Virus record (IMG/VR): IMGVR_UViG_3300001782_000005
Coordinates: 124,001-188,000 of that record
DNA length: 64,000 nt
Direction: 5' to 3' (one strand)
Below are positions 22,813 through 39,569 of this stretch, piece after piece. The notes under the pieces are model-generated. The model had not been told where the DNA came from and did no database searches. It saw nothing but the letters and a program-made list of their open reading frames with translations. Each line of letters opens with the position of its first letter. Position 1 is the first letter of the stretch. Both the position numbers and the translations under genes were made by a program.

Positions 22813-23052
22813 TTACCGCCTCATGGCCACTCCTATCTGAAATTCCGGACATATTTCTGGCCTCCATGCATAAAAAATCATCCTTGTTTCGTAAGATATA
22901 CAAGGATTACACTTCTCGCTACAATTAGACATTAGTAAACAACCATCACATGGATTAGGGATGGTTTTTTGAAACTCTTTTAACCTTTCTTGAGAGAAAT
23001 TCTTCTGACGTAACTTTTCTGTCTTCATCTGTATACCTGCATATAAACTCAC
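22813..23052 (-). CDS. Small Cx2Cx5Cx3C protein
   Basis: NPCDGCLLMSNCSEKC; overlaps neighbouring ORFs. Confidence 0.45.
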   Translation of the reverse strand: MSLYAGIQMKTEKLRQKNFSQERLKEFQKTIPNPCDGCLLMSNCSEKCNPCISYETRMIFYAWRPEICPEFQIGVAMRR

Positions 23053-23161
23053 AATCTCTAGTTACAGTACCACGACAGTAATTAATCTTATCATGTTTCT
23101 CAGCAAAAGGGCACGTCTCAGTATAGGGACACACCTCATTCGATTTTAGCCTCAAAGTCAT

Positions 23162-24898
23162 TTATTCCCCACAACTATTATCCCCAAGGTTACAAACCAT
23201 ATCTGATGCAGAGAGGTTTCTTATAATATTCCTTCCATTCTCTTTCAGATATTCAATTACTTCATCTTTATCCATTTTGTTATAAATCTGACCTTGCCGA
23301 ACACCATCTACATAAACAGTTACTCCCTTCAAATCTTTTATATACTCAAGAAGTAAATCACTCAATTGTTGATCCGTCGTCCCTGCTGGCATATTAATCG
23401 TCTTACTAACTGCACCATCAACAAACCTTTGAACTGCCGCTTGAATATTAAAATGATCTTTTGGTTCAAGTTCAAAAGAATCAACATACCAATCAGGTAT
23501 ATCAATTCCTTCTGAAAGAAACCTTTCATAAAGCGGATGAACATAAACCCGACTACCGACCCGATCATTTCTTACATATGATTTGGCAAATAGAGGTTCA
23601 ATTCCACTAGTTACATCAGCTATAAGAGAAATCGTTCCGGTTGGGGCAATTGCCATTGCCGTAACACAACGAGAACCATATTTCTTTATATCCATTCGTA
23701 ATTCACCAGGAAGCTTTTTAACAAACGAAGCATTTACATAAGGCATTTTCTCAAACTTTGGAAATGCGCCTTTCTCATCCGCCAATTTTACTAAAGTCTG
23801 ATAAATTATATTTCTAATAAATCTCATTACTTTCTCAGCCTCTTCTATAGATTTATCAGAACCATATCTTACACCCTTGGAAAATAAATATTCAGCTAAA
23901 CCCATAACTCCAATACCTATTCTCCTTGAATTATGGGCCTTAATATCAATCTCCTTTAACGAGTATTTATTTACATCAATAACATTATCAAGAAAACGTA
24001 CCGCTAGTTCGACAGTAGATTCAAGTTTTCTCCAATTTGTATAGACATTTCCTGTGATAAAACTAGGTAGGACAAGTGAACCTAAATTACAGACATCATA
24101 GGGAGCGAGAACTGCTTCCCCACAAGGATTTGTACCCGTGACTGGATCATAATAGTAGGAATTATTTTTTCTCAAATAATCCCAATTTAGAAGGCCAGGT
24201 TCAGCACACTCAATCATATTTTTTATGATCTTATCCCATATCAATCTAGCCTTCACTTTTCCATAGGATCTCTGTTTAAATTTGAATTCCCACTGTTTAT
24301 CTTCTTCGACGGCATTGAGAAATTCTTGATTAACAGCAACTGAAATATTGAAATGTGGTAATATCCCATGCTGCAACTTAGCATCTATAAAATCACAAAC
24401 CTCTGGGTGTCTAACATCAACAGAAGCAAGAGCTGCTGCCCTCCTAGCACCGCCACTCTCAATTGTTTCAGCGACTCCATCTGCTGCTTTAATAAAACTA
24501 ACTAACCCAGATGATTGACCACCCTTTCCCAGAATAATATCACCTTTTGGTCTTAACTGGGAAAAATTGCACCCGACCCCTCCTCCATCACTCCATAGAA
24601 TCAGAGCATCTTTTATAAATTGACCTATTTCTTCTATGGAGTCTCCACAAGGGAGATGATAACAGTTAAACAATGATCCGCTAGGTCTTCCACAATTTCT
24701 CAAAATCCTCCCGCCTGGCAAAAAGTCCCTATTGTAGATCATATCAAAGAATAGATCATAATATTTCTTATCACTCTCAACACTAGAAACAGTTCGTGCA
24801 ACTCTTTTGCAACACTCCTGCCAGTCCTCTCCTTCCATAAAATACCTAGCTTCGGCAACCGCTTGCGCGTTCGACGACAAAATAACTTCTTTGCCCAT
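23162..24898 (-). CDS. nrdJ: Adenosylcobalamin-dependent (class II) ribonucleotide reductase
   Basis: PGGRIL, NCY, TNPCGE, CNLGS, IAPTGTIS, SKTIN; compact, no beta subunit nearby. Confidence 0.88.
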   Translation of the reverse strand: MGKEVILSSNAQAVAEARYFMEGEDWQECCKRVARTVSSVESDKKYYDLFFDMIYNRDFLPGGRILRNCGRPSGSLFNCYHLPCGDSIEEIGQFIKDALILWSDGGGVGCNFSQLRPKGDIILGKGGQSSGLVSFIKAADGVAETIESGGARRAAALASVDVRHPEVCDFIDAKLQHGILPHFNISVAVNQEFLNAVEEDKQWEFKFKQRSYGKVKARLIWDKIIKNMIECAEPGLLNWDYLRKNNSYYYDPVTGTNPCGEAVLAPYDVCNLGSLVLPSFITGNVYTNWRKLESTVELAVRFLDNVIDVNKYSLKEIDIKAHNSRRIGIGVMGLAEYLFSKGVRYGSDKSIEEAEKVMRFIRNIIYQTLVKLADEKGAFPKFEKMPYVNASFVKKLPGELRMDIKKYGSRCVTAMAIAPTGTISLIADVTSGIEPLFAKSYVRNDRVGSRVYVHPLYERFLSEGIDIPDWYVDSFELEPKDHFNIQAAVQRFVDGAVSKTINMPAGTTDQQLSDLLLEYIKDLKGVTVYVDGVRQGQIYNKMDKDEVIEYLKENGRNIIRNLSASDMVCNLGDNSCGE

Positions 24899-24900
24899 CT

Positions 24901-25299
24901 TTATTTCTCCTTGCCTTTAAAAAGTAAGTATGTCTCACCTTTTGTATCTTTAAATACTGACAAAAAATGATATATCCCTTTAATTTTCCTCCCCTTAAAA
25001 TCAACTACTATGTGCCTTTTTGGTTCATATTTTAAAATTACACAACTCCCTCCATCCCATTTTTTTAATGTCCCTGCACCATAACCAGTTTTGATTTCTC
25101 CAGTAAATAATGCTTCTTCCTCAGTATGATCGTGAGTCCGGGTTACCATTACTCGAACTGCCTCTTTAGTTGGGATTTCTTTTCTAGATGCAAAGGATAT
25201 CCATTTTGTACCCCTAGGTATTTTAAAGCGAATATCATAATGAAGACCAGCCTTTTTGGCCCTATGTTCTATTACTACAAATTTGCTACTTACTTTCAT
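24901..25299 (-). CDS. Stand-alone LigD 3'-phosphoesterase domain
   Basis: FVVIEH.A...HYDIR, DH, YGAG....WD.G. Confidence 0.8.
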   Translation of the reverse strand: MKVSSKFVVIEHRAKKAGLHYDIRFKIPRGTKWISFASRKEIPTKEAVRVMVTRTHDHTEEEALFTGEIKTGYGAGTLKKWDGGSCVILKYEPKRHIVVDFKGRKIKGIYHFLSVFKDTKGETYLLFKGKEK

Positions 25300-25771
25300 C
25301 TTTAAATTCCTCCAATGCTAATCTAGCTAAGCAATAAGCATCACAAATATTATCGTCTTCAAAAGATTCGCCCCACCTCTTATAACACTTGAGAAGCATT
25401 AGATTCTTCTTTGCATTACCATTATTTGTGACAAATTTCTTTAAAGTTTTTGGTGGGATTATTTTGATTTGAATGTTGGTTTTAAAAAAGTAAGTTCTAA
25501 TTAAGAAATGTAATCCAGCCAATTCAAACAATCGACTAGATTTTGAGAAATAGGCAAGGTCCTCCATATAAACTTTTACTAAACGAGGGACTTTTTTTAT
25601 AAAAGAAAGATTTTCCAAAATATCCAGAAGTCGTTTTTCTGTCGGAGTATCAGAACTTGTAGAAATAAGTTTTTGCTCAACGATCTCCCCATCTTCATTA
25701 ATCATTACAATTCCGGTACCAATAAGACTCGGGTCGATACCAACGAAGTAATTACTCCCCCCTTCAACCAT
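25286..25771 (-). CDS. ruvC: RuvC-like Holliday junction resolvase
   Basis: VGIDPS...TG, E, P.TLKK..T.NG.A.K, DD..DAY. Confidence 0.85.
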   Translation of the reverse strand: MVEGGSNYFVGIDPSLIGTGIVMINEDGEIVEQKLISTSSDTPTEKRLLDILENLSFIKKVPRLVKVYMEDLAYFSKSSRLFELAGLHFLIRTYFFKTNIQIKIIPPKTLKKFVTNNGNAKKNLMLLKCYKRWGESFEDDNICDAYCLARLALEEFKDESK

Positions 25772-25786
25772 TTAGGTATTCTCCTC

Positions 25787-26512
25787 TTATCCATGATCAA
25801 TAATTACATTCGGTATTGCTCCAGCAGTTAATTTTTCAACAATCTCCCGCTTCTTCTCTTTTCCCTCATCCATAATTTCAGAACTCAAGGGTATCTCACC
25901 AAACGGGGTCCTTAGAGTTCCATCACCGTATTTCTTTCTAATTCTGCCTAACAGCATCATAATATCTGCAAGAGCCATTTCACAAAATAAAACCTGAAAT
26001 TCATTGGGAATACCTCTAAAATCTGGAGGTTGAATACGCTCATATTCTATGGTTACATATGGACCAGCATTTGTAACCACAGGAGAAATCCTTATCCTAT
26101 TGGGATGTATAAACTCATGAGTATAATCCCAACTAGAAAACATTTTTATCTGCATAGAAGTTGCAACGGCCAATGCCCAATCTTTTATCTCTCCTTGTGA
26201 TAGAGGACCCATTGGCGGATGACCATGTAGAATCAAATTACCTTCATCAAAATAAACATCAACAACATTCAGAATTTCGTACCCCTCGGGTTCATGAATA
26301 TAATACTCGTTACTTCTGCCAGGAACTTTATTTTGGTCAAGAGTCACATTTAGACCCATTCTCTTTACCTGCGGAATATAATACGAAAATTCTCGCAGAG
26401 TATAATCTGTGACATACTCCATGATCTTGCTATCTTCAATCTCAATAAAATTAAACGGGAAAGCAAGATTATCTTTTATATATTTCAAAACTCTAGATGG
26501 ATTTAACATCAT
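25787..26512 (-). CDS. Neck / head-tail adaptor protein (T4 gp13-like)
   Basis: LG.IR.KY, G....EG......E.L...P.....G C-terminal pattern. Confidence 0.6.
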   Translation of the reverse strand: MMLNPSRVLKYIKDNLAFPFNFIEIEDSKIMEYVTDYTLREFSYYIPQVKRMGLNVTLDQNKVPGRSNEYYIHEPEGYEILNVVDVYFDEGNLILHGHPPMGPLSQGEIKDWALAVATSMQIKMFSSWDYTHEFIHPNRIRISPVVTNAGPYVTIEYERIQPPDFRGIPNEFQVLFCEMALADIMMLLGRIRKKYGDGTLRTPFGEIPLSSEIMDEGKEKKREIVEKLTAGAIPNVIIDHG

Positions 26513-27651
26513 TTTCCTCCGTTATAATATATAACCTCCAAAATATCTTTATCAATAAACACTCGATTCATCTCTAATGCTTTCTTCATACTCTCTAATC
26601 TTGCTCGACTATCATTTTCTAAAATTTGTAATATCCTTTTTCTTTTCTCAATCATTTCAGTAGTTGTGGGTTCATCAACTTCTCTTGACAATAACTCAAA
26701 TGAAACTAACTTTAAGTTGTTGGAAATTAAACTCTTTTTCTCTTCTTGTTCTATTATTTGATTTATATATTTGTTCTTAAATTTGAGGTCGCCAAACTGA
26801 AAAATTGGTCTACAATTAAACACATCATCATATAATTTTTCCATTCCGCCAACCAACTTAACTATCTCATCCAATAGAGATGCGACCCTCTTCTGACCAA
26901 TGCCGGGGATTCCGTCAACATCATCCCCAGTATCACCAACTATTGCCATAGCAAGTGGAAGATATTCATCAGGAAAATTATTCTTGAATTTAAGATATCT
27001 GGTCATTACCTCATTCTTCTTTATTATCCTCTTCCTTCGCCCAGTCTTACAAAATATATAGACATTATCATTCACACACTGAAAAAGATCATGATCATTG
27101 GAATAAACAACATGGACAACATTTGGACTTGTATCAACTAAAGAATTTCTTATAAGATAATACGGGATAAAATCAGTTTCCAAATTAGGAATTCTGATAA
27201 TCTTTATATTTGGCATCAAATTGCAAGCTCTATCAATAAGTTGAAAATTCTTCTGAACTATTTCAGCAAATAATTCTCTCTTATCTCTCTCCAATCCATA
27301 AAGATCATCAATCTGCCTAGAGATTTTATATTTCTTACTTATATTTGTATGATAGTATGATTTTCCCGTCTCAAAAAAGATATAAAAATTTATATTAACT
27401 TTTCTTTTAACAGAGTATAGTTTATGAAACCAAAGAAATGATAATAAAGATTCAAAAACTGCAGTATTTATATAATTTGATTTAAGGGTACTCTCAACTA
27501 GATTTATAATCGCATGCTGCATATATAAAGATTGAAGATTATTTTTCAAATCCAAATAGAGATTCAAAGTATCATAATCAGAATATGATAGAATTTCATC
27601 AAGTATAGAATATGTCGGGTAATAACTAAGAATTGACGACGGGTGCATCAT
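26509..27651 (-). CDS. 5'-3' exonuclease / flap endonuclease (T4 RNase H-like)
   Basis: ETDF, SNDHDLFQ, GDTGDDVDGIPGIG; start reassigned to ATG 27651. Confidence 0.8.
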   Translation of the reverse strand: MMHPSSILSYYPTYSILDEILSYSDYDTLNLYLDLKNNLQSLYMQHAIINLVESTLKSNYINTAVFESLLSFLWFHKLYSVKRKVNINFYIFFETGKSYYHTNISKKYKISRQIDDLYGLERDKRELFAEIVQKNFQLIDRACNLMPNIKIIRIPNLETDFIPYYLIRNSLVDTSPNVVHVVYSNDHDLFQCVNDNVYIFCKTGRRKRIIKKNEVMTRYLKFKNNFPDEYLPLAMAIVGDTGDDVDGIPGIGQKRVASLLDEIVKLVGGMEKLYDDVFNCRPIFQFGDLKFKNKYINQIIEQEEKKSLISNNLKLVSFELLSREVDEPTTTEMIEKRKRILQILENDSRARLESMKKALEMNRVFIDKDILEVIYYNGGK

Positions 27652-28134
27652 TATCTCCCAAAGAATGATATTTCTTTCCAACTTCCATAATTTTTTTGTC
27701 AATATCATATATTTGTTCTCGAATTTGACCCATTTCTCCTTCTTTTCTTTTTAATTCTTGTTCGTGGAAATCTCTTCTTCTAATCAGGTCAACCATCTCG
27801 AGTGGTTGGTTAACCTTCTCATCACCCAAGTAAATATCCCACTCTTGCTTATCTCCCACAAACCACATAAAATATTTTATTTTCTTCATCTTAGATTTAT
27901 AAGAATCATAGTGTGCTTTCCAACCTGCCAGAAGATTTCCATCTAAATCATAAACATTAAGCTCTATAACTGCATAGGGCGGCTGACGCTTATTCCATAC
28001 CTCAAGAGACTTAGGAAACCTATCAACTATATCTTCCAGACTATCATACTCATAAACGTCCGTATGTGTATCTTTATGCTGGCAGCAACCACACCAATAT
28101 CCATTATGACTTATTTCTTCTACCTTGAAATACA

Positions 28135-28875
28135 TCAGTCACCCTCAGGATTTACAAGGCTAGATCTACAATAGACATTTATATCAATGTCAGATATAGC
28201 AGTTGATATTCTATTTAAGCAAACATTTTCTTGAATATTATACATCGTAAAATTCATATCACCATCGTGATCAATAATAAACGGAATTGAAACAATATTC
28301 GTTACAAAATTCATATCACGGTTAGACATAATACCACTTACCAGTTTTGCATACTGATCTTTAGATTGAGCCTCAGTTGATATAGAAGCACTATCTCCTT
28401 CAAATATTACTCGAATATTATTAACATTAAAATTAGAAGTAATAACTCTTATTCTATCCGAGATTATTTTCTCAATACTACAATTTAGAATACAATCAGA
28501 CTCATCAGCTACAAGTATACTTTCAGCTTCCTCATCTGGCATAAACTTATTATTCATAAACTCTAAATTCGGCGTAGTAAATCTAAATGAAGAATACTGA
28601 TCTGTAAATGAGTAATCTCTTTCATTTACAGTTATTTCAACTTCCTGCTCAGAAAAACATTTTAATAAATCTATCTTCTGCTTCAAATTTGTTAAAGGTA
28701 TATTCAATGCAGGTATAATAGGATTCAAATCCATTTCAAAAACAGCCGAGTTATCATTAGTCCTCTGACGCACTACACCATTACGAATATCTACGTCATC
28801 AAAATCTTCCTTAAGAAGAGAAATACATCTAAGAAATTCATCATACCTTTCCGCACTAAGATTTACAGTAACCAT
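28135..28875 (-). CDS. DNA sliding clamp (gp45/PCNA-like)
   Basis: 246 aa, acidic, two-domain alpha/beta pattern, near the clamp loader. Confidence 0.55.
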   Translation of the reverse strand: MVTVNLSAERYDEFLRCISLLKEDFDDVDIRNGVVRQRTNDNSAVFEMDLNPIIPALNIPLTNLKQKIDLLKCFSEQEVEITVNERDYSFTDQYSSFRFTTPNLEFMNNKFMPDEEAESILVADESDCILNCSIEKIISDRIRVITSNFNVNNIRVIFEGDSASISTEAQSKDQYAKLVSGIMSNRDMNFVTNIVSIPFIIDHDGDMNFTMYNIQENVCLNRISTAISDIDINVYCRSSLVNPEGD

Positions 28876-29275
28876 TCAAACTCTCCTTTCTATCCAACCT
28901 TTTTCACGACAACCATATACACAAACTTATCCTCTTTTACTTCTATAGAACTAGAGAAGTCAATAGTTGTAAAACATTCCTCCACATTTTCAATTACTTC
29001 CATAACTCTCTCAGAAATATGTTTACTTCCTATTTCTTTAGAATTTATAGGAATTGAAAAAAGCATCAAGACAGCATCGTTATCATTATACTTACAGTTG
29101 AACATACACATATTGTTTCCCATAAGTTTAAATAAACGATCTTTCGATGCCGATTTACAAAGAAGTGCATAATAATCTATCTCAGTAACAGACCCGGTAT
29201 ATTTAGCATCAGAGTCAATTGTGGCCTCAAAAATCTCTTTTAATTTCTCTCTCACAACTTCTTTTCCCATATTAT

Positions 29276-30274
29276 CTACCCTCTACTAATATTTAAATAT
29301 TCATACTGGGGAATTATAGGAGTAATGTTAAAATCTTTACCTGTTTTATTATAAACAACAACTAACTTATTAATATAACGACCAACATTTCTTGTCATCC
29401 GCTTATAATAATCAATAGTAACATCGTTATCAGACAATATATAAATATCTGGCATTAAAACTCTCTCATTTTTCATAAGACTAACTATTAGGGATGTATA
29501 AGAGGTAGAGAATGCACAAGCATACAATCTAGCAGATTTTTTTATGTTTAAAGAATCAAATATATGTTCTGTGAATATATCAAAAATTCCCTCTGATATT
29601 ACAACTTCATTACCAAAAGGGTTACCACCATCTAGTTTATAATAGTCAAGAAATTTAGAAGCATAGAGATTATACTTCCAATGATCAAATTCTTGTGACT
29701 CATCTATATTTCTAAAATATAACCTACTTTGATTATTTGCTATAAAACAAATAAAATTCTCTTGAAGATAATCTTTAAGACGAAACAACGTTGGACTAAC
29801 TGGAATCTCATTCAATCTTATCAACTCATTAATATCAAAAACTAAACCTCTAATAGACTGAAGATCAACATTTCTAAATTTTAACCTTTGTTTAACATAG
29901 AGAGATTTTGCCTTAAACCTATCTTCTTCAATTTTCGGTCTTATCAACTTCTTTACTTGAACTTGCTGTCTAGCTAATTTTGTCCTTCTCTTTTTCCTTT
30001 CTTTAACCTCCTTTTCATCAACAAAATCATTTGAGATATCTTTTCCTTCTATTCTTCGTATTAGTTTAGGAATCACTCCACTAACATTACAATCTCCAAA
30101 AAAACAATGAAAAATCGGAGCTTCTAAAGATATATACATATGATAATGCTTCTTCTGCTTTCCATATTCGCACCAAGGACAACGACAGATAATATTACTC
30201 GATGAAACCTTAACAGGTTCACCAAGTCTATCTCTTAGAAAATCTATAAAACTGTCCTGATAAATACCAATCAT
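29276..30274 (-). CDS. DNA primase (T4 gp61-like)
   Basis: CPWC...H...C..C Zn finger; TOPRIM EGIFD, DND; KDFN. Confidence 0.8.
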   Translation of the reverse strand: MIGIYQDSFIDFLRDRLGEPVKVSSSNIICRCPWCEYGKQKKHYHMYISLEAPIFHCFFGDCNVSGVIPKLIRRIEGKDISNDFVDEKEVKERKKRRTKLARQQVQVKKLIRPKIEEDRFKAKSLYVKQRLKFRNVDLQSIRGLVFDINELIRLNEIPVSPTLFRLKDYLQENFICFIANNQSRLYFRNIDESQEFDHWKYNLYASKFLDYYKLDGGNPFGNEVVISEGIFDIFTEHIFDSLNIKKSARLYACAFSTSYTSLIVSLMKNERVLMPDIYILSDNDVTIDYYKRMTRNVGRYINKLVVVYNKTGKDFNITPIIPQYEYLNISRG

Positions 30275-30768
30275 TATTACTCCTAAATAGTCATTAACCC
30301 ACCAGATAATGACTCTTTAATATCGAGTTCCATCATCTTCTTAAAATCCTCCAAAGGAATCCAAAGGCAAACCTCTTGTAACTCAGGATTTATCTGATCA
30401 TCAATCCTATAATCTTTTCCCCTACCTACATAAACTTTAAGAACAACTCTTTTCCCTCTAGCATATGGGTGTGCTAACTCATTATCTTGTTCAACATAAC
30501 ATATACCGCACGGAACATCATTTGCTCTAACACATTGTTTACCAGTCAAAAGTTGAAAACCTTTACTATTAAACATCTTCCATCCAAGATTTTTATTTCT
30601 CACTTTTGATTTCATTCATTTCTCCAAGGACCCAAAGGTTCAAACCTATCCTCATCAACATAATAAACTGCGCTAAGACTCTCATCATCTAAACACTCAA
30701 AAATTACCTTCCTCTCTTCTTCATAAACTTTCAGAGCAAAAAGGTAACCATCAATATCTCTGAGTTCT

Positions 30769-31044
30769 CTAGTACGAATCCAAGTCATCTAATTTCTTAT
30801 AATCCCCACCTGTCATTAAGTGATCAATCCAATAAACTAATCCCCTACCTTCACACTTATCACAATATGAACCATCCCATGCCATATGGGTATTGTTGCC
30901 ATCAGTCCATTCTTGAATTCCGGCCAAACCTGTACCATCACAATGTTCACACTTAGTAGTAGCCTCTGGAGGTAATTTTTGAAGTTCTGTATATCTTCTT
31001 CTTAAAGAAATCATTCTCTTCGCAGAATGTCTAATTGCCATCAT
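30769..31044 (-). CDS. DnaJ-type zinc-finger protein
   Basis: CEHCDGTG and CDKCEGRG. Confidence 0.65.
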   Translation of the reverse strand: MMAIRHSAKRMISLRRRYTELQKLPPEATTKCEHCDGTGLAGIQEWTDGNNTHMAWDGSYCDKCEGRGLVYWIDHLMTGGDYKKLDDLDSY

Positions 31045-32027
31045 TTGCTCCCAACTGCTTTTCGATAATCCATTAGCACTTTAATAATTTCATATACACA
31101 GGCCATAAAATGCATTGAGGGAACCAAACAACTTCCATGACTATTTGAATATTTATTTACAACAATCTTTGCTGGAGCAGGAATGCCCTTCTTAAAAAAT
31201 AAATTTGAATATAAACTCCTATATTCAAGATCCCTCTCATCCAATCTCGAGATGATCATATTTACCGATTTACCTATCTTATGTTGTTGATCATTCTTTA
31301 AAGCATCAATTATCTCAGTAATACAACCAGCAATAACTCTCTCACTTGTTAGGGCAATATCTTTACTTACCCTCAAAGTATTAGTCCTTGAACTTCTCTG
31401 TAAATTATTGACGATCTTTCTAACATCTGGATAAAAACTATCAATAACAAATTTCAAATCATCTTCATTATACTTAATCTGCTCTCCACCGAGAATATTC
31501 TTACAATATTCAAGTACAAACTCAAGCGGCAATTGCTTAAAAAAATACTCTTGGGTTCTACTTTGAATTGCCTCAGGAAGTTTAGAAATATAATTACAAG
31601 TAAATAAAAAGCGACCATATTTCTCATATCTTTCGATTATTGACCTTAATGAGTGAAAACTAGCATCCGTCAGATAATCCGCTTCATCAATGAAAACAAC
31701 ACGAAAAGGATCGTTACCTGCTGGAGGGATTTTCAAGAAAGGTTCAATAACATCTTCAACAAATGATATACCTCTTGTTCTCTTTGATGAACCATTTATC
31801 TCAAGAAGATTATCATTTGCATTATTGAGAATTCCATTTTTCGAAACTAATATTCTAGCAACCGTTGTCTTGCCCCCACCCGGAGGACCATGAAATAAAA
31901 AATTTGCTATATCTCTCTGCTCAATACATTTCTTAAAATCTTCTTTATAATCATCTGGCAACACTAAATCATCAATAATTCTAGGTCTATACTTTTCAAC
32001 CCAAAGTCTTCCAAGAACTTGCTCCAT
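31041..32027 (-). CDS. Clamp loader AAA+ subunit (T4 gp44 / RFC-like)
   Basis: WVEKYRP, GPPGGGKTT, DEAD, SR; start reassigned to ATG 32027. Confidence 0.9.
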   Translation of the reverse strand: MEQVLGRLWVEKYRPRIIDDLVLPDDYKEDFKKCIEQRDIANFLFHGPPGGGKTTVARILVSKNGILNNANDNLLEINGSSKRTRGISFVEDVIEPFLKIPPAGNDPFRVVFIDEADYLTDASFHSLRSIIERYEKYGRFLFTCNYISKLPEAIQSRTQEYFFKQLPLEFVLEYCKNILGGEQIKYNEDDLKFVIDSFYPDVRKIVNNLQRSSRTNTLRVSKDIALTSERVIAGCITEIIDALKNDQQHKIGKSVNMIISRLDERDLEYRSLYSNLFFKKGIPAPAKIVVNKYSNSHGSCLVPSMHFMACVYEIIKVLMDYRKAVGSK

Positions 32028-32521
32028 CGCGACTCCATTAGCAATGATATCCTTCAACAGCATGAAGAAGCTGAAGTTGTTTCTGTGTTTCAATAAATTT
32101 GCCTATAGCTTCTTCACCTATAGCTTCTATGAAAGCATCTAAGGCTCTCCCGCCTGTTACTAATTTAACGTTTCCATCTTCTCCAAGTTTATGAAAATAT
32201 GGTTCAGCAATTTCTATATTTAACTTCTTTATTTGTTTAAAAATGAGTATATCAGCGGCTGCTCTAGTTGGGGCTGTAGCAGCATTAAACGAAATATATA
32301 ATCTTTCCTCATTTTCTTTATAAACTAAAATAAAATAATCACAAACAAATGTATGTATACCCGCTTTAGCTGGATCCCCCTGGTAAGTAAAGTCTGTTCC
32401 ATACTCATCTAATTTTTTAATTATTTTTTTAATCATGCTGTTCATATTAATTTCTCCAGCACTATTTATTTTTTATTTGTTCCATATCAAAAAAATTTAT
32501 ACTCATATGGTATGAAACCAA

Positions 32522-32549
32522 AAAAAAGAGTTGTGAACAACTCTTTTTT
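32522..32549. terminator. Intrinsic terminator (symmetric hairpin)
   Basis: AAAAAAGAGTTG-TGAA-CAACTCTTTTTT. Confidence 0.7.
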
Positions 32550-32764
32550 CTACATTTTACCAAGGGTTATTTTTAGGGTCTCAAATAATTGATCCATTGC
32601 GTGCTGTATTTCATCATTAGATATACAATTACGACCAAAACAGATCGAACAAATGGCAACCCCAATAAAATCACCATCCTCAACAATCATTCCTGTTGGA
32701 CGCTGACAGAGATTACACATAATCTCTGTGTCATCTATTGTTATGAAATCTTTATACTGTGCCA

Positions 32765-33355
32765 TTAATGTACCCCATTTAGTTTTGGTATAAGTATAGG
32801 ATCTCCTCTCCTACATCCAGGACACATCTTTACTTGCCACTCCATTATCCTCTCTTCAATAAGTGATTTTGTCTGAATGTATGGATGTTTCCAATATGTT
32901 CTATTCCAAATTGCAAATATTCCCGCAATAAAGGCCCCATCTTGCTCAGCCTTAAATGCTAAAGCACTAACAGAACTTCCGGTGGTAATTACGTCTTCAA
33001 TTATAATAAGGTTACACCCTGAAAGGTTATGCACTGAAGTTGATCTAAATCTAAATGGATCATTCCATTCATTAACTTTCTCTGCAAATATAAACCTCAC
33101 ACCCAGTTTGTAGGCTAACATGCCTGCCAAAATCCCTCCAGCGTCTGGTGGGCCAGTAATTGTATCAAACTTATATTCAAAGAGAGAGAGTTGAGTAGCT
33201 AACGCATCAACAACTTTTGTTCTCAATATTTCATCATACAGTATCAAGTCTTTATTTACATATTTGAGTGTATGATTTCCTGAACTAAGCTGAAAATGAC
33301 CTTCTACTACAACTCCCCTCTTAACCAAAAGATCCCTAAGGTTTGTTTTTACCAT
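32765..33355 (-). CDS. pyrE: Orotate phosphoribosyltransferase
   Basis: GHFQLSSG.H, PRPP loop IIIEDVITTGSS, C-terminal CPGC. Confidence 0.8.
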   Translation of the reverse strand: MVKTNLRDLLVKRGVVVEGHFQLSSGNHTLKYVNKDLILYDEILRTKVVDALATQLSLFEYKFDTITGPPDAGGILAGMLAYKLGVRFIFAEKVNEWNDPFRFRSTSVHNLSGCNLIIIEDVITTGSSVSALAFKAEQDGAFIAGIFAIWNRTYWKHPYIQTKSLIEERIMEWQVKMCPGCRRGDPILIPKLNGVH

Positions 33356-33770
33356 TCCCTTTCCTTACCATGTTATCAACTACATTTTCAATAAGTTCTT
33401 TATTCAACATAGGAAATGAGTCAATAAAATATTTCTCAGTCCTAATTCGGCATTCTTCACATCTACTAACTAAATCACACCATGCCTTGTTTATAGCGAA
33501 AGAATTCATTTTGATACCTTTCATCCAGGTATCCAAATAAGGAGTAACATCCTCAAGTGGAGATTTATGATTATATCCTCTATATTTCATTTCCTCGACA
33601 ATTTCATCATGCCTATCTCCCAGATATTGAGGAACGAGAAAATGTTTTTGAATATAACCCTTAACTGAGCGACCTCCCCTAATAGTTCCAACAAACATAT
33701 GATGTTCGAGATGCTCTCCAAGTAAGTGTTGTCTGCACATTAATCTAGGTGGTAAAAACCATTGTCTCAT
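33336..33770 (-). CDS. denV: Pyrimidine-dimer DNA glycosylase (endonuclease V family)
   Basis: L.RQHLLGEH.E, EM..RGY.H.SPL. Confidence 0.7.
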   Translation of the reverse strand: MRQWFLPPRLMCRQHLLGEHLEHHMFVGTIRGGRSVKGYIQKHFLVPQYLGDRHDEIVEEMKYRGYNHKSPLEDVTPYLDTWMKGIKMNSFAINKAWCDLVSRCEECRIRTEKYFIDSFPMLNKELIENVVDNMVRKGNGKNKP

Positions 33771-33786
33771 TTGATCTCCTTATCAA

Positions 33787-34158
33787 TTAGAATATGCAGA
33801 GGTATGTAATTACAAAACCATAAATGAGAAGGCTAATAAAAGGAGAGAGAACCTTTAGATCATCAATAGCTGATTTAGTTTTTGTTCTCTTCTGAGTATA
33901 ATTACTATACTTAATACACCCTTCTGTACATATAGCTCCAATAATACATTCTCTACATGGATTTTTACAAAGAGAATCAAGCAACCACGAAGAGCTTCTC
34001 CTTCGCTCTAGTAACTCCTGTGTATAACCACCTTCGGTAATAGTCATCGTCCCAATATCGACTCCTTTCCTCAAATAAAACAACTTTTTTCCACTCACTC
34101 CCCTGTGCTCTATGGACAGAAATAGCATAACCAAAATCAAAAAGGTCAATACTATCAA
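33787..34158 (-). CDS. Cx2Cx5Cx3C protein with C-terminal TM (true start likely near 34049)
   Basis: NPCRECIIGAICTEGC. Confidence 0.5.
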   Translation of the reverse strand: MIVLTFLILVMLFLSIEHRGVSGKKLFYLRKGVDIGTMTITEGGYTQELLERRRSSSWLLDSLCKNPCRECIIGAICTEGCIKYSNYTQKRTKTKSAIDDLKVLSPFISLLIYGFVITYLCIF

Positions 34159-35251
34159 ATCCCGTTCCTTTTATCCTTTCCCTATTCTTCTTAAAGTCCG
34201 CTTTATCAACAACATCACCATATGACTCAACACCAAAACAGCAATTATGAACCAGTCCAGTATACATATCGTTAAAATCATCCATCTCAATAGTGACATT
34301 ATACATATCATCAGAAACGGGCAGCAACCACATAAGGGTTCCAAGTTGGCCATTCATTATCTTAGTAACATAATTATTTCGTAGACAAATAAGTCTCTCA
34401 CCAGGATACGGATCAGGAGCATCAAAACCAAACTTTTGCCTGATCATACTATTTATCAATACCCTAGACTTATTCATCCCACATAAGGCAATGACATCCT
34501 CATTAAAATCAATTGCTTCAAAAATTTCTCGTGATTTCCTTTCACGCCAAGCAATCTTAAAAACGCCCGGATCATGAACTCCATATGGAATTGATCCATT
34601 ATTTCTAACAATCATTGATAATTTTATAATTGGATTTCCCAATGCCTGCCTGTGAATATCTCTGAGAATATAATCTGGTTTCTTCATCAGATAAAAATCT
34701 TCCCCAACAGGAGGCAATTGTCCATGATCTCCAAAAGCAACAATTGGTACCTGGTAACTGTTTAGATCTTTCCATATCTCTTCATTGACCATAGATGCCT
34801 CATCAATTATGATCATATCACAAGGGATCTCAAGTTTCTTTTTCCAACCACTAATTACTTTCTTTCCCCATTTATCTATTTTATATATTGGTTGGTATAC
34901 TAAAGAATGAATAGTCCCAATAAAATCTGCGGAATAGACTGCGTCAGCATCTCGTAACCTTGTAGCAAGAACTGAAGATGCTTTGCCTGTAAATGCACAA
35001 AAAGCAACAGTATATCCTCTTCCAATTTTATAAATTTCATTTCTGAGATGTGGAATAAGGTGAGTCTTGCCAGTACCTGCATATCCACCAACTAGTCTAT
35101 AATTATCCGGTTTTGGAACAACCAAACCTTCAAAATCAGAACTGGCAAATACTCTAACATAACTGGGTTTGATTACATACCTAACCCAATCTACTAACTC
35201 CTTTAAAACATGGGATTGTTCAGAACTTAGATTATTCACTGTAGTCCTCAA
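33977..35251 (-). CDS. dda: SF1B helicase (Dda/RecD-like)
   Basis: GYAGTGKT, DEASM, GD..QLPP, HRQ, NG..G, YA.SVH.AQGSE, YT..TRA. Confidence 0.9.
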   Translation of the reverse strand: MRTTVNNLSSEQSHVLKELVDWVRYVIKPSYVRVFASSDFEGLVVPKPDNYRLVGGYAGTGKTHLIPHLRNEIYKIGRGYTVAFCAFTGKASSVLATRLRDADAVYSADFIGTIHSLVYQPIYKIDKWGKKVISGWKKKLEIPCDMIIIDEASMVNEEIWKDLNSYQVPIVAFGDHGQLPPVGEDFYLMKKPDYILRDIHRQALGNPIIKLSMIVRNNGSIPYGVHDPGVFKIAWRERKSREIFEAIDFNEDVIALCGMNKSRVLINSMIRQKFGFDAPDPYPGERLICLRNNYVTKIMNGQLGTLMWLLPVSDDMYNVTIEMDDFNDMYTGLVHNCCFGVESYGDVVDKADFKKNRERIKGTGFDSIDLFDFGYAISVHRAQGSEWKKVVLFEERSRYWDDDYYRRWLYTGVTRAKEKLFVVA

Positions 35252-35501
35252 GTAATTTTGTTATTTTAACTAACACATGACCAAGAAATTTTCTCGGATC
35301 CTTAATATTCTTTAACTCAATCTGACTAAGAAGTATGGTCTTTAAATCAGTAAAAAATGAATCAAATCCAATAGCGATACCCGATGGTGTCTTCTCTTTG
35401 GCCATCAAACACTTCTTACCTGGAGTAATTGGATGTATAAAACCACACTCAGGACATGTATCGCCTCTAGTCTGAATGTCGCCTGTTTTCATAGACCACC
35501 T

Positions 35502-35654
35502 CTAAAAGAAAATCCATTTAATGTATTTACTAATCCCAATCAACCAAGGGATTAAACCAAATAAAATAAATACCAAAAGTGCCCCCCAAACAATAACCTT
35601 AGCAGAAAGGTCATCTCCTTCACGCTTCCAATATTCAATTGCTCTTTCTATCAT
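35502..35654 (-). CDS. Small membrane protein (50 aa, not in ORF track)
   Basis: ATG with GGAG RBS; TM helix; GAACAAA motif upstream. Confidence 0.5.
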   Translation of the reverse strand: MIERAIEYWKREGDDLSAKVIVWGALLVFILFGLIPWLIGISKYIKWIFF

Positions 35655-36728
35655 GACTACTCCAATCTTTTTATTTATTTTTTGTTCCCCCCCAGGATTA
35701 AAGTATCCCGGGAGGGGACAAATGTTATAGAAAAATTTCAGACCACCCCATCTCCTCTTTCTTCAAAACTGCTCTAGCATTTCTAATAGCTTCGGGTAAT
35801 ATAAGTATAGGTTTAACACAGGCCCAACAACGATGTATTCCCGACACGGGCGGTTGATTATGGGTTTTGTTACCACAGTCTCCACACTCAAAACTCATAA
35901 ACTCCTGACCACCTTTCATAGTTAAGGTTATCTCTCTCATGACCGAATTCTTGTTGTAACGAATTTTCGTGTGACAAGTCATTTTTTGTGCCTCCTCATT
36001 ATTTTTAGAACTTTCTCTGTAAGGATCATCCAACCGTCATCATATCTATGTTTAATATTATGATCCTCAAACCCGCGCGGTCTTACAATTTTATAAGTAT
36101 AAATTTTCCTCCTCTTGCTTCTACTTTCTTGTCTCCTCACTTGAATTTGACCTATTCTCTCAAAATCCACATATGCACATATTATTAACAAGTTATCCGT
36201 CCTCCCTCAAAACTTTAAAATCAAAAGGACCCAAATTCCCACTATAAACCTGATCAATAAAATTCTGCTCCTGAGTCATGAGAAGATTTATTGCCTTCTT
36301 GTCATTCGTATATCCTATATGATTAGGATCAATATATTCAAGAGTCATTATCCGCTCACTATCAGTTACAGGAAAGAACCTAAGACCTTTCTCTTCTGAA
36401 GCATCAATTATGCTCGGTATCCCATCAGTAAGTCTAAGTCCACACTCTTTAGCAATCCATTCAACATAAACTTTATCCTCAATAGGAATAGACATAACTC
36501 CCCATATCATCTCTTCCCACTTGACCATGACAAGTTGAAATAAATCATTCTTAGGAGTATCTGGAGGATAATGTCTATATTCCAAAATAGACCCAAATAG
36601 ACCTACACCAATCCTAATAGGTATCAACATACCAATTATAAAAAATCTACTCTCATCTTTAGTCATCTCCCTGAGTTCATCATCGTTCATTGGACGACTT
36701 ATCTCTGGTATTGGCATATATCCTCCCT

Positions 36729-37757
36729 CTACTTTTTTATTTTCCCTATCTTATAATCTTTCTCAATAATGCCTACCTTCTTATCTCCCCTAGTATGCAT
36801 TGGAACCCAATATACACCTTTATGACGTCCAAAAAGACCTCGTCCCTCTCGACAATCTCGAAAGTGACCTCGACAAATATGAAGAGCTCGTCTCAAACCT
36901 ACTTTATCACTCTTCCCCTCATATTTCAAAATTTTCCTTGCTGCATCTATTTCGAGAGTTTTAAATTTCATTAGAGGTCTTTTTCCCTTTTTCTCTCGAT
37001 ATTTGTTAATTCTCACTTCACTTTTTCTCTCAACTGCTTCAACATTCTTACAGTGTAGTAAAGATACTCCAAAGAGAGAAGGAAGTATAGTTGTGAAGAA
37101 AATAAGATTATTAACATCTTCACCATCATCGAATCCTGCTAATGTAGGAGCAGGTTTTACAACTGGAAGGTGATCAAATTCACTAACTCTCTTAGTCGCA
37201 AACAGTTCTTGACCTTGATCATCAAGGTAACTATTATATATACCGGCACAACTATAACCTTCCTTGAATTTCATACTTTTTAAAAAGATTATATGAATAA
37301 CAACCCAATTAATTAAGCTATCATCCATATGAACTAATCTTCCTTCTACTTCTAGTTGATGACTCCAAAGACCAATTCTAGAGATTCGTCGAAATAATTT
37401 CCCATGATCTTTTTTTGAAAGGCCAAGCGAAAATGCACCAACTCTCTTTACCCTAGAGAAATAATTCTTTACCAGTTCATTAGCAATTGATATAGTAGGA
37501 ACTGTAAACTCAAACCAACTAAATGGCCACGGTGGCGATAAGCAAGGAAATATTTTACTATCCCACCAAGACCACACATCCTTCTCGCCAGTATATATCC
37601 ATTTTGAGACGTTAGATAACTCAACAAAGGTAGTATGACCAAGTAGAACTTCCTCTACATCTATACTTATCTCATGGAAAATATAAGCACTAAGTTGCTC
37701 AATTAAAAACTTTATATCATAGATAATATCATCTAGATATTCATCAATAAACATCAC
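36729..37757 (-). CDS. Conserved phage protein with C-terminal H..RGH.R motif
   Basis: LHICRGHFR...WV..H.RG...G...KDY pattern common in phage hypotheticals. Confidence 0.55.
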   Translation of the reverse strand: MMFIDEYLDDIIYDIKFLIEQLSAYIFHEISIDVEEVLLGHTTFVELSNVSKWIYTGEKDVWSWWDSKIFPCLSPPWPFSWFEFTVPTISIANELVKNYFSRVKRVGAFSLGLSKKDHGKLFRRISRIGLWSHQLEVEGRLVHMDDSLINWVVIHIIFLKSMKFKEGYSCAGIYNSYLDDQGQELFATKRVSEFDHLPVVKPAPTLAGFDDGEDVNNLIFFTTILPSLFGVSLLHCKNVEAVERKSEVRINKYREKKGKRPLMKFKTLEIDAARKILKYEGKSDKVGLRRALHICRGHFRDCREGRGLFGRHKGVYWVPMHTRGDKKVGIIEKDYKIGKIKK

Positions 37758-37766
37758 AATCTCCTT

Positions 37767-38159
37767 TCATATACCAATTCTCTCAAGTCCAAATGGACTG
37801 GCATTAAATCTATGCCTACATTTAGCACACATTATATTAGTACAAAGTCCTCCTTGAGGTCCCTCAAGAAATTCCCGACCACCACAATCCGGACAGCAAT
37901 TATACTTTCTAGCTATCCTTGTTAATTCTTCATCATCCATCACAACCTTATCACATATTTCAGTACAATTAGTTGTAACTATACAATCAGTGCAGGGAAA
38001 TAATTCTCTTTCAATTCTCATAACTACATTTGTTGGTTTAACCATTTCATAGGTAACTTCTGATGGATGCTCATATTCTCCATCTTTCAAAAACCCAAAA
38101 AGTTTAAACATCTGAGTACAGAAATCCCAAACGAATGACATTTTTTTCCTTTCTACCAA
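37767..38159 (-). CDS. Cx2Cx5Cx3C plus Zn-ribbon protein
   Basis: FPCTDCIVTTNCTEIC; CPDC...CAKC. Confidence 0.6.
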   Translation of the reverse strand: MVERKKMSFVWDFCTQMFKLFGFLKDGEYEHPSEVTYEMVKPTNVVMRIERELFPCTDCIVTTNCTEICDKVVMDDEELTRIARKYNCCPDCGGREFLEGPQGGLCTNIMCAKCRHRFNASPFGLERIGI

Positions 38160-38461
38160 CCAGGTCCAGCTACAGAATATTTATAACTACAACCTTTACA
38201 TCTATAAATATTTCCCAATGCTGGCGGTTGACAATCACGAAACCATTCGGTTTCTCCGGTTCTTTGAATAATTCCCCCACAGTATGGACACATACCCGGA
38301 TATATATCACTTATGTAGCTAACTTGTGCCTGGTCAACTTTATCACACCTCTCTTGGCAAGTCTGAATCAATATGCATCCGGTACATGGATATTTGAATC
38401 TTCTAATTTCCCACTCGTATTTTAACTTCTTTATCCACATTCTAAACCGATAACCCACCAT
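38153..38461 (-). CDS. Cx2Cx5Cx3C plus Zn-ribbon protein (tandem paralog)
   Basis: YPCTGCILIQTCQERC; CPYC...CKGC; start at ATG 38461 after AAGGAGG. Confidence 0.6.
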   Translation of the reverse strand: MVGYRFRMWIKKLKYEWEIRRFKYPCTGCILIQTCQERCDKVDQAQVSYISDIYPGMCPYCGGIIQRTGETEWFRDCQPPALGNIYRCKGCSYKYSVAGPGW

Positions 38462-38505
38462 ACCCTCCTTCCAATTAAAAAAATCAACAAGTCTATTATT
38501 CATAA

Positions 38506-38519
38506 ATTAATATATATAG
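38506..38519 (-). promoter_or_regulatory. Putative early promoter CTATATATATTAAT (copy 3)
   Basis: Exact motif at the major strand switch. Confidence 0.75.
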
Positions 38520-38624
38520 TGGATTGAAGGTTTAAAAATAAGAAAATTTCTACTGAATGAGATACTTTTTTAGAATATAGTAACAAATGAATGATAGAAT
38601 CAGTTTGGAGGGAGTAGTGCAAAT

Positions 38625-39569
38625 ATGAATATAAAAATTGAACGATCTATACGACAAGCATTGTGTCCATGTAGGTATGGTTCGTGGGGTAGTAAATTCA
38701 AATGTAGCTCCTTAAATGGTTCAAAACCATTATTTAATATAGATCATATGCTACTAGTTAACATTATTCAAGATATGTTAATTCAGAATTATTGGGATGG
38801 GAGGAACAACGGAGAAATACCCAAATCCTGGAAAAATCCAATAGTTTGGAAAGGTATTAAACCATTGATACATAGAGGAGATTGGTTCAATATATATAAT
38901 GGTACATCAACTGAGCGTTCAAAAGATTATACTTATACCTATCTATATAATAAATATCCCTTTCTAAAGGAGCGTATAAAACATGCCGGATCATTGAAAA
39001 AGTTGATTCTAGAGCTTAATAATATGAGATTCAACTTAGTTATGAGAGTAAGAGCAGTATATCATGCGAAAAAGAAGATGTACAATTATCAAACTCATAA
39101 AGATTATAATAAAGAATATCCTGAATACGATAGTTTCTTTATGAATACAATGAATAAACCAGCATCAAAATTATTTAACTTTGAGATAACCAAGGAAGAA
39201 AAATTTAGTAGAGGTGGTATATCAGATATTGAATTTCATATAAAGATGAACAATATATACTTCTATTCAATGTACCAGGGTGCCATGTATGTAACTATCG
39301 ACTGGATACCCGAGGAGATATATACCCTGAAGATGAACAATTATAGTAAATTTCTTTATATACTAATGCTAGCAGGGAAGGTAAAAAAGGACTATGAGTA
39401 TAACTTGGGTGAAATAGTTGAAAAACTACAGCTGAAACCTAATCAAAAGAAGAGTCAATTATGTATGCTCATTGATAGGTACTTAGATGATCTGGTGCAA
39501 AATAACTTTATCGAAGTAGAATCAAGGGGTGGATTTAAGAATAGAAGATATATTATAAATAGAAAGTGA
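38625..39569 (+). CDS. Putative replication initiator / winged-helix DNA-binding protein
   Basis: Basic; C-terminal wHTH-like (L.EI.EKL...YLDDLV...FIEV...G....Y.I); directly followed by tandem repeats. Confidence 0.5.
   Translation: MNIKIERSIRQALCPCRYGSWGSKFKCSSLNGSKPLFNIDHMLLVNIIQDMLIQNYWDGRNNGEIPKSWKNPIVWKGIKPLIHRGDWFNIYNGTSTERSKDYTYTYLYNKYPFLKERIKHAGSLKKLILELNNMRFNLVMRVRAVYHAKKKMYNYQTHKDYNKEYPEYDSFFMNTMNKPASKLFNFEITKEEKFSRGGISDIEFHIKMNNIYFYSMYQGAMYVTIDWIPEEIYTLKMNNYSKFLYILMLAGKVKKDYEYNLGEIVEKLQLKPNQKKSQLCMLIDRYLDDLVQNNFIEVESRGGFKNRRYIINRK

What the first reader, a model, noticed from the sequence alone, without database searches (positions are those of the whole stretch)
22813..38461. Four small proteins with a stand-alone P-Cx2Cx5Cx3C motif (SPASM-like spacing)
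Seen: NPCDGCLLMSNCSEKC (22813), NPCRECIIGAICTEGC (33787), FPCTDCIVTTNCTEIC (37767) and YPCTGCILIQTCQERC (38153), all with identical spacing and a conserved Glu. Two add a Zn ribbon and one adds a TM helix. Known: Cx2Cx5Cx3C is the auxiliary [4Fe-4S] motif of SPASM domains. Inference: an expanded family of miniature Fe-S or Zn proteins, two of them first behind an early promoter, possibly redox sensors or host-takeover factors.
Basis: partly seen in the sequence, partly recalled or inferred. Interest (0 to 1): 0.62.

Follow-up and report, generated by a model that had tools for sequence, protein, structure and literature searches.

The report
Expanded phage family of Cys4 mini-proteins
The four small proteins are real, conserved members of a large, so far unannotated family of tiny proteins from uncultured giant phages. 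They are built around a four-cysteine metal-binding knuckle that shares SPASM's cysteine spacing but is not a SPASM domain, and which metal it binds and what it does are still open.

Summary
The window lies in a complete 277-kb jumbo phage genome. All four P-Cx2Cx5Cx3C motifs sit at the stated places, against 0.05 bare motifs expected by chance. The genome holds 18 such small ORFs. An HMM trained only on foreign sequences recovers exactly these 18.

A profile search of 1.84 billion proteins found 265 clusters. The 149 listed that were checked are 44-218 aa long and all carry the motif, often as MK[ND]PCxxC[LI][VI]xxxC[ST]xxC at the N-terminus. About a third add a C-terminal TM helix and some add a Zn ribbon. 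Contexts are phage-like, mostly jumbo-size contigs, with up to 12 copies per 12.7 kb.

Pfam, PHROGs, NCBIfam, PDB sequences and GenBank phages do not cover the domain, and fold searches gave no match. Orthologues show purifying selection (dN/dS 0.09-0.23 for the two Zn-ribbon forms).

SPASM membership fails. There is no radical SAM core, only 4 of the 7 Cys are present, and all profile hits are below threshold.

Best reading: a new metal-knuckle head on modular small phage proteins, with Zn slightly favoured over Fe-S. The phage carries five radical SAM genes, which keeps the Fe-S reading alive. The "early promoter" is unverified.

The parts
22813..23028 (-). W1: 71-aa family member with motif only (motif 22909-22953). 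It overlaps both neighbouring genes.
   Evidence: The orthologue in a related phage (L014 2025-2222) and P0095 keep the motif and the tail ISYET.xIFYAWRP. dN is 0.33 with dS saturated. The independent HMM gives E 3e-8.
33787..34047 (-). W2: motif (33916-33960) plus a C-terminal TM helix (about 33790-33849). The true start is probably TTG 33984, giving about 65 aa, just before the helicase stop at 33977.
   Evidence: The orthologue in L011 was found. dN/dS is 0.48 downstream of the helicase stop but 31 in the part that overlaps the helicase. HMM E 1.7e-10.
37767..38141 (-). W3: 124 aa, with motif (37953-37997), a helix and a Zn ribbon (about 37818-37895).
   Evidence: Seven homologues at 55-81% identity. 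All eight Cys are invariant. dN/dS is 0.12-0.23. The AF2 model has pLDDT 82.
38153..38461 (-). W4: about 102 aa, with motif (38345-38389) and a Zn ribbon (about 38189-38290). It is the first gene of the leftward block and a paralogue of W3.
   Evidence: The L007 orthologue is 101 aa. dN/dS is 0.09. GGAGG lies in front of ATG 38461 / GTG 38458.
38504..38624 (.). Divergent intergenic region between the leftward replication block and the rightward gene at 38625-39569. It is the presumed promoter region, but this is unverified.
   Evidence: GC skew changes sign here. ORF map. Sigma-70-like sites are no more frequent than in shuffles.

Best explanation
The four ORFs are translated members of a large, previously unannotated family of very small phage proteins. 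The shared part is a head of about 25-30 residues: P-C-x2-C-[LI][VI]-x3-C-[ST]-x2-C, followed by an acidic/Lys stretch with an aromatic residue six positions after the last Cys.

I read this head as a compact four-cysteine metal knuckle that lets a tiny protein fold. A single structural Zn(II) is the most likely metal. The known 14-residue retroviral knuckle and the reversed 3-5-2 spacing of T4 gp32 are my precedents (own knowledge).

The head is modular. It occurs alone (W1), on a C-terminal membrane anchor (W2) or on a Zn ribbon (W3, W4). The variable tails would give each paralogue its target. Copy number (18 here, arrays elsewhere) and fast divergence outside the Cys point to small adaptor or regulator proteins of infection. 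The window copies are co-transcribed with replication and recombination genes.

Shown: the family, its conservation, its modularity and its phage-only distribution. Inferred: metal binding, Zn, and the role.
For: - Motif excess over chance. The DNA pattern occurs 18 times in the genome and 0 times for the reversed control.
- An HMM trained without own-genome sequences finds exactly 18 ORFs at E<=2.4e-5, the next hit at 0.26.
- 265 clusters at E<=1e-3 among 1.84e9 proteins. The 149 listed that were checked are all small and all carry the motif.
- Column statistics: P 96%, four Cys 100%, L/I/V at the two following positions. 81/148 have the motif in the first 10 aa, 48/148 a downstream TM helix, 11/148 a Zn-ribbon-like pattern.
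- Purifying selection.
- Multi-copy in related and unrelated phage contigs.
- In the AF2 model the motif is a coil with one helical turn, next to a helix and a Zn ribbon.
- One subfamily tolerates x6 in place of x5.
- The same 2-5-3 spacing occurs inside a true Zn finger, MYND.
Against: - No metal was measured, and the tool gives no model coordinates with which to check Cys geometry.
- Cx2Cx5C followed by hydrophobic residues is, from my knowledge, a classic three-ligand [4Fe-4S] pattern (SPASM Aux II, EndoIII/MutY, WhiB, FNR, AddB/Cas4).
- The only recurrent weak profile hits are Fe-S families.
- There is no Gly after the CxxC, unlike typical Zn knuckles.
- The phage carries five radical SAM genes.
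- No binding partner or phenotype is known.
Confidence: 0.5

Rival explanations
1. The head binds an Fe-S cluster, [4Fe-4S] or [2Fe-2S], possibly bridged in a dimer. The proteins would then act as oxygen/redox-sensitive regulators or as small electron donors or cluster carriers for the phage's radical SAM enzymes.
For: - The Cx2Cx5C triad plus hydrophobic pair resembles Fe-S ligand loops (own knowledge).
- TIGR04085 SPASM is the top recurrent weak hit (3/18 and 18/150), with PapB, CbpB, anSME, SDH Fe-S and FpoF models behind it.
- hhalign places the profile on the SPASM motif of the phage's own enzyme (E 0.0068, probability 5.6%).
- The genome has 5 radical SAM genes, four of them SPASM/twitch-like. 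It has no flavodoxin or Fer4 ferredoxin.
- A related jumbo phage has 16 radical SAM matches.
- Compact 4-Cys Fe-S motifs exist (SoxR, anamorsin; own knowledge).
Against: - All profile hits are below the curated cut-offs.
- The PDB profile search found nothing at E<=10, solved SPASM enzymes included.
- In SPASM the four Cys serve two clusters and need three more Cys.
- Spacing can be x6.
- Eighteen oxygen-labile proteins per genome would be costly.
- The same proteins carry ordinary Zn ribbons.
Confidence: 0.33
2. The small proteins are substrates (RiPP-like precursors or protein targets) of the phage's radical SAM/SPASM enzymes, which would cross-link their cysteines.
For: - One family gene (genome 96382-96678, minus) ends exactly where a PapB-like radical SAM gene starts. 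Relatives keep the linkage with one small gene in between.
- 3 of 5 radical SAM genes lie within 2.2 kb of a family gene. My estimate from the coordinates is p about 0.03.
- Subtilosin's donor Cys have Cx2Cx5C spacing (own knowledge).
Against: - None of the four window genes is near a radical SAM gene; the nearest is 18 kb away.
- In three other phage records no family gene lies within 5 kb of a radical SAM gene.
- The motif is mostly at the extreme N-terminus, with no leader, and is fused to TM helices or Zn ribbons.
- The enzymes have no N-terminal RRE-size extension.
- Arrays occur on contig pieces with no radical SAM gene called.
Confidence: 0.07
3. The cysteines are redox-active thiols (disulfide switch or thiol-disulfide exchange) and not metal ligands.
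For: CxxC pairs are typical of thiol oxidoreductases (own knowledge). A weak BFVD similarity to phage thioredoxin-annotated proteins is not significant.
Against: There is no thioredoxin fold and no Pfam hit. All four Cys are invariant together. The Lys-rich head ahead of a TM anchor suggests a cytoplasmic location, which is reducing.
Confidence: 0.06
4. Chance ORFs or untranslated sequence.
For: W1 and W2 overlap neighbouring genes. No expression data could be obtained.
Against: Motif statistics, conserved orthologues, dN/dS well below 1 and 265 clusters worldwide.
Confidence: 0.02

Closest known systems
SPASM domain of radical SAM enzymes (TIGR04085 / PF13186)
   Same: Identical Cx2Cx5Cx3C spacing. 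Weak recurrent profile similarity.
   Different: SPASM is a C-terminal domain of a radical SAM enzyme. It has seven Cys that hold two clusters, and the four Cys are split between them. Here four Cys stand alone in 44-218-aa proteins. Pfam SPASM and the family HMM do not cross-hit.
Short Zn knuckles (retroviral CX2CX4HX4C) and the T4 gp32 CX3HX5CX2C site (own knowledge)
   Same: Four ligands within 14 residues. A small structural metal site in viral proteins.
   Different: The ligand set is all-Cys, the spacing is 2-5-3, there is a hydrophobic pair after Cys2, and there is no sequence homology.
MYND zinc finger
   Same: It contains a C-X2-C-X5-C-X3-C stretch.
   Different: MYND has eight ligands cross-braced on two Zn ions, is eukaryotic and is unrelated in sequence.
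WhiB-like proteins, including actinophage WhiB homologues (own knowledge)
   Same: Small phage-borne Cys4 proteins with a Cx2Cx5C triad that bind a [4Fe-4S] cluster and redirect the host.
   Different: The fourth Cys of WhiB lies about 27 residues upstream, not 3 downstream. PF02467 was not among the reported hits for the four proteins or among the families listed for the 150 scanned. These phages are not actinophages.
Small phage Zn-ribbon proteins (Lar-like, NrdR/Trm112-type ribbons)
   Same: The C-terminal halves of W3 and W4.
   Different: All these matches are weak, and they concern only the ribbon, not the motif head.

Membership tests
SPASM domain | Lies C-terminal to a radical SAM core with CX3CX2C | tested here: not met
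   There is no Radical_SAM hit in the four ORFs. They are 65-124 aa long.
SPASM domain | Seven-Cys motif CX9-15GX4C...CX2CX5CX3C...C | tested here: not met
   Only the central four Cys are invariant. The motif definition comes from PMC5715301.
SPASM domain | Profile match above the curated cut-off | tested here: not met
   TIGR04085 gives a best E of 0.0011-0.0023, no better than the 23.4-bit, sub-cut-off (27 bits) match of the phage's own SPASM enzyme. PF13186 hits only three radical SAM ORFs of the genome.
SPASM domain | Binds auxiliary [4Fe-4S] clusters | not testable with these tools
   This needs metal analysis and spectroscopy.
New phage Cys4-knuckle family (defined here) | P-C-x2-C-[LIV][LIV]-x3-C-x3-C recognised by an HMM trained on foreign members | tested here: met
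   All four window ORFs score E 1.7e-10 to 3.9e-8.
Zn ribbon (C-terminal part of W3 and W4) | Two CxxC knuckles on beta hairpins | tested here: met
   CPxCGG...CxxC is invariant. Four strands at pLDDT about 90. Pfam ribbon models match only below threshold.
WhiB-like | C-Xn-C-X2-C-X5-C with PF02467 profile match | tested here: not met
   PF02467 is not among the reported hits at E<=10 for the four ORFs or among the families listed for the 150 scanned at E<=0.1. No conserved upstream Cys.
Sacti/ranthipeptide precursor | Short leader-core peptide encoded next to its radical SAM/SPASM maturase | tested here: not met
   The window genes lie at least 18 kb from any radical SAM gene. The motif is usually N-terminal. 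One non-window paralogue does abut a PapB-like gene.

The most novel reading that the evidence does not exclude
These are stand-alone miniature Fe-S proteins, a phage-specific class whose head derives from or converges on the SPASM/EndoIII/WhiB-type Cx2Cx5C cluster loop. They would be multiplied to dozens of copies in jumbo phages that also carry 5-16 radical SAM enzymes and no ferredoxin or flavodoxin. Their role would be as the phages' own electron donors or cluster carriers, or as oxygen-sensing switches.
Probability: 0.3. Interest if true: 0.8.

Novelty: new variant of a known kind. Interest (0 to 1): 0.58.

Why it matters
Small Cys-rich phage proteins are usually left as 'hypothetical'. 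Here one defined head domain accounts for 18 genes of a single jumbo phage and for hundreds of clusters in metagenomes, yet it is missing from Pfam, PHROGs, NCBIfam and the PDB. Defining it would annotate a visible share of jumbo-phage dark matter.

The family is also easy to test: the proteins are 60-120 aa, and metal analysis is a one-week experiment. If the metal is Fe-S, it would link to the unusual wealth of radical SAM enzymes in these phages. It would then be a rare case of a virus bringing its own Fe-S proteins in bulk.

Tried and rejected
- Near-DNA search of 18 kb and tblastn of two family members against GenBank phages found no relevant match.
- DUF7631 gave a single weak hit (E 0.12, and 0.02 in the genome search). 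It did not recur among the families listed for the 150 members scanned, and no paper mentions it.
- The ESM Atlas look-alike and shape searches gave only unnamed clusters or Zn-ribbon-like rows.
- The first AF2 run, with 14 sequences, had pLDDT 60 and was unusable.
- Foldseek against PDB and BFVD, and VIA-align wide, gave nothing beyond weak ribbon matches; the best Z was 3.2. The motif head alone was not folded separately.
- The word-based protein search with the 150-sequence alignment returned only 8 hits.
- Complex prediction on the PapB-like radical SAM enzyme with its abutting family protein gave no verdict. It counts neither for nor against binding.
- A search for relatives of the SPASM enzyme in IMG/VR returned only the same phage.
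Full report
**Setting.** The window is bases 124001-188000 of a 277,131-bp IMG/VR virus record with direct terminal repeats, rated complete. GC is about 35%. It has no near relative among GenBank phages. Its recombinase is only about 28% identical to the nearest cultured phages.

The flagged stretch lies in a minus-strand block of replication, recombination and nucleotide-metabolism genes:
- RecA/UvsX-like recombinase, class II-like RNR, LigD-type phosphoesterase and RuvC;
- 5'-3' exonuclease, a clamp-loader-like AAA protein, a PRTase and a pyrimidine-dimer glycosylase;
- a RecD/Dda-like helicase.

GC skew changes sign at about 38.5 kb, where transcription diverges.

**Observation.** A six-frame regex scan finds P-C-x2-C-x5-C-x3-C exactly four times, at 22909-22953, 33916-33960, 37953-37997 and 38345-38389 on the minus strand. 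Shuffled windows give 0.05 bare motifs on average and none with the Pro. The Zn ribbons of the last two ORFs and the hydrophobic C-terminus of the second are as described.

**The family is much larger than four.**
- The same scan over the whole genome finds 18 small ORFs with C-x2-C-[ILV][ILV]-x3-C-x3-C. Seven lie in a 6-kb stretch at 251.9-257.6 kb and four at 67-69 kb.
- It also finds the true SPASM motif of a 325-aa radical SAM enzyme.
- A degenerate DNA pattern matches 18 times, against 0 for the reversed control.
- An HMM trained only on sequences from other sources recovers exactly these 18 ORFs at E<=2.4e-5, with the next hit at 0.26. It does not hit the SPASM enzyme.
- Only the four Cys are invariant among the paralogues; the Pro is common. 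The flanks share about 20% identity.

**Are the ORFs genes?**
- W3 has homologues at 55-81% identity in metagenomes. Orthologues of all four exist in related phage contigs, in the same positions.
- dN/dS is 0.12-0.23 for W3 and 0.09 for W4. For W1, dN is 0.33 with saturated dS.
- For W2, dN/dS is 0.48 downstream of the helicase stop. In the 24 codons that overlap the helicase it is 31, so W2 probably starts near TTG 33984.
- W4 most likely starts at ATG 38461 or GTG 38458, behind GGAGG. This matches the 101-aa orthologue.
- W1 overlaps both neighbours, and this arrangement is kept in the relative.

**Distribution.** A 40-column profile of 29 domain sequences (A4) was searched against 1.84 billion representatives. 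It gave 265 clusters at E<=1e-3. The 149 listed proteins that were checked are 44-218 aa long and all carry the motif.

Statistics from 148 of them:
- Pro precedes Cys1 in 96%.
- L/I/V fill the two positions after Cys2.
- S/T follows Cys3 in 63%.
- An aromatic residue sits six positions after Cys4 in 66%.
- The motif lies in the first 10 residues in 81, often as MK[ND]PC.
- 48 have a downstream TM helix, 11 a Zn-ribbon-like pattern, and 11 an extended CPC form with extra upstream Cys.

Contexts are phage-like:
- runs of tiny unannotated genes (12 copies in a 12.7-kb contig);
- a 244-kb contig with six copies in its replication module;
- a 255.6-kb NCBI contig labelled as a Thorarchaeota MAG, with 12 copies in 20 kb.

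IMG/VR records of 30-248 kb carry 3-12 copies each, with controls at 0. A stringent pattern over 185,579 species genomes gave three true hits, all on MAG contigs and none in an isolate.

**Known families.**
- Pfam, PHROGs and NCBIfam have no model for the domain. No Pfam family matches more than 2 of 150 members and no PHROG more than 1.
- The only recurrent signal is the NCBIfam SPASM model, in 3/18 and 18/150 members. The best E is 0.001, below the cut-off. A few radical SAM maturase and Fe-S subunit models follow.
- hhalign lays the profile on the Cx2Cx5Cx3C of the phage's own SPASM enzyme, at 5.6% probability only.
- Pfam SPASM finds three radical SAM ORFs in the genome and none of the 18.
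- A profile search of PDB sequences finds nothing at E<=10.

SPASM is defined by a radical SAM core and seven Cys that hold two clusters (PMC5715301). Both features are absent here, so this is not a SPASM domain. The same 2-5-3 spacing also occurs inside the Zn-binding MYND finger, so spacing alone does not name the metal.

**Structure.** With a 150-sequence alignment, AF2 models W3 residues 40-124 at pLDDT 82. The motif is coil with one helical turn (pLDDT 76-79), followed by a helix and a four-stranded ribbon at about 90. Foldseek (PDB, BFVD), VIA-align wide and the Atlas give only weak Zn-ribbon-type matches. Coordinates are not returned, so the Cys geometry could not be measured.

**Radical SAM context.** The genome has five radical SAM genes. 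One is a B12-type gene in the window (56688-57965). Four are SPASM/twitch-like. There is no flavodoxin or Fer4 ferredoxin. A related jumbo phage has 16 radical SAM matches.

One family gene ends exactly where a PapB-like radical SAM gene starts. Three of the five radical SAM genes lie within 2.2 kb of a family gene, which I estimate at p about 0.03. In three other records, however, no such proximity exists, and the four window genes are far from any radical SAM gene. A complex prediction for the abutting pair gave no verdict.

**Explanation.** Metal binding by the four invariant Cys is very likely. I favour a structural Zn knuckle (about 0.5) over an Fe-S cluster (about 0.33).
- For Zn: ligands this close together, the tolerated x6 variant and the Zn-ribbon company fit it.
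- For Fe-S: the Cx2Cx5C-plus-hydrophobic pattern, the weak SPASM and Fe-S profile hits and the radical-SAM-rich genomes keep it open.

The head is a module fused to anchors or ribbons. The copy number and divergence suggest small infection-stage adaptors, but no function was shown.

**The 'early promoter'.** It is unverified. W4 and W3 are the first genes after the strand switch, but sigma-70-like sites are no more frequent than in shuffles. Relatives place a third, membrane-bound family member ahead of them.

**Novelty.** This is a new, widespread domain family of a known general kind (small Cys4 metal modules of phages). Interest is moderate to high, because the family is large, unannotated and easy to test.

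Noticed in passing
window 56688-57965 (+); genome 42187-43188 (-), 95347-96381 (-), 259754-260731 (+), 270138-271061 (+): The phage carries five radical SAM genes. One is B12-binding (HpnJ/BchE-like). Four are SPASM/twitch-class, far below any equivalog cut-off. A related 207-kb record has 16 matches. This is an unusual load for a phage.
   Followed up: partly
L005 1347-2678 (genome 95347-96678, minus): A 98-aa family member with a C-terminal motif ends exactly where a PapB-like radical SAM gene starts. Relatives keep the pair with a 68-70-aa gene in between. It may be a substrate or partner pair.
   Followed up: partly
L006 1923-3805 (genome about 39.9-41.8 kb, minus): Four paralogous genes of 122-150 aa all start MK[IV]K.DFVTNSSS. 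They flank a family member and lie just downstream of a radical SAM gene and a small 131-aa gene. They form an unannotated family.
   Followed up: no
window 22955-23161 (-): Another 68-aa Cys-rich ORF (CPY..CPF...C....C...C) lies between the RNR gene and W1 and overlaps W1 by 74 nt. It is conserved in the related phage (L014 2164-2364).
   Followed up: no
L021 (NCBI GCA_048882605.1, JBHLRM010000001.1, 255.6 kb) and L026 (Thermoplasmatales MAG contig): Contigs binned into archaeal MAGs carry 12 and 4 family copies among runs of tiny genes. They look like jumbo-virus contigs. Either they were mis-binned or they hint at archaeal hosts.
   Followed up: partly
L017 (JGI 3300033144 contig, 12.7 kb): There are twelve family genes in 12.7 kb. 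Most are of an extended eight-Cys form (CxxC ... C ... CPCxxCx5Cx3C followed by Trp-rich helices). Eight Cys would suit two metal centres.
   Followed up: no
window 30769-31044, 32550-32765, 35232-35492, 35725-36033 (-): Several other small CxxC proteins lie in the same block: one DnaJ-like with CxxCxGxG repeats and three ribbon-like. The replication block is rich in mini metal-binding proteins beyond this family.
   Followed up: no
window 16070-16111 (-): A bare Cx2Cx5Cx3C match lies in a 39-codon Cys-rich frame that the family HMM does not recover. Similar Cys/Ser/Arg-rich frames occur at genome 2-26 kb. They are taken as chance matches and are not family members.
   Followed up: yes
L007 9070-9654 and L011 9087-9680: Related phages place a third family member of 194-197 aa (TM helices, then motif, then Zn ribbon) ahead of the W4/W3 pair. 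This phage lacks it.
   Followed up: partly
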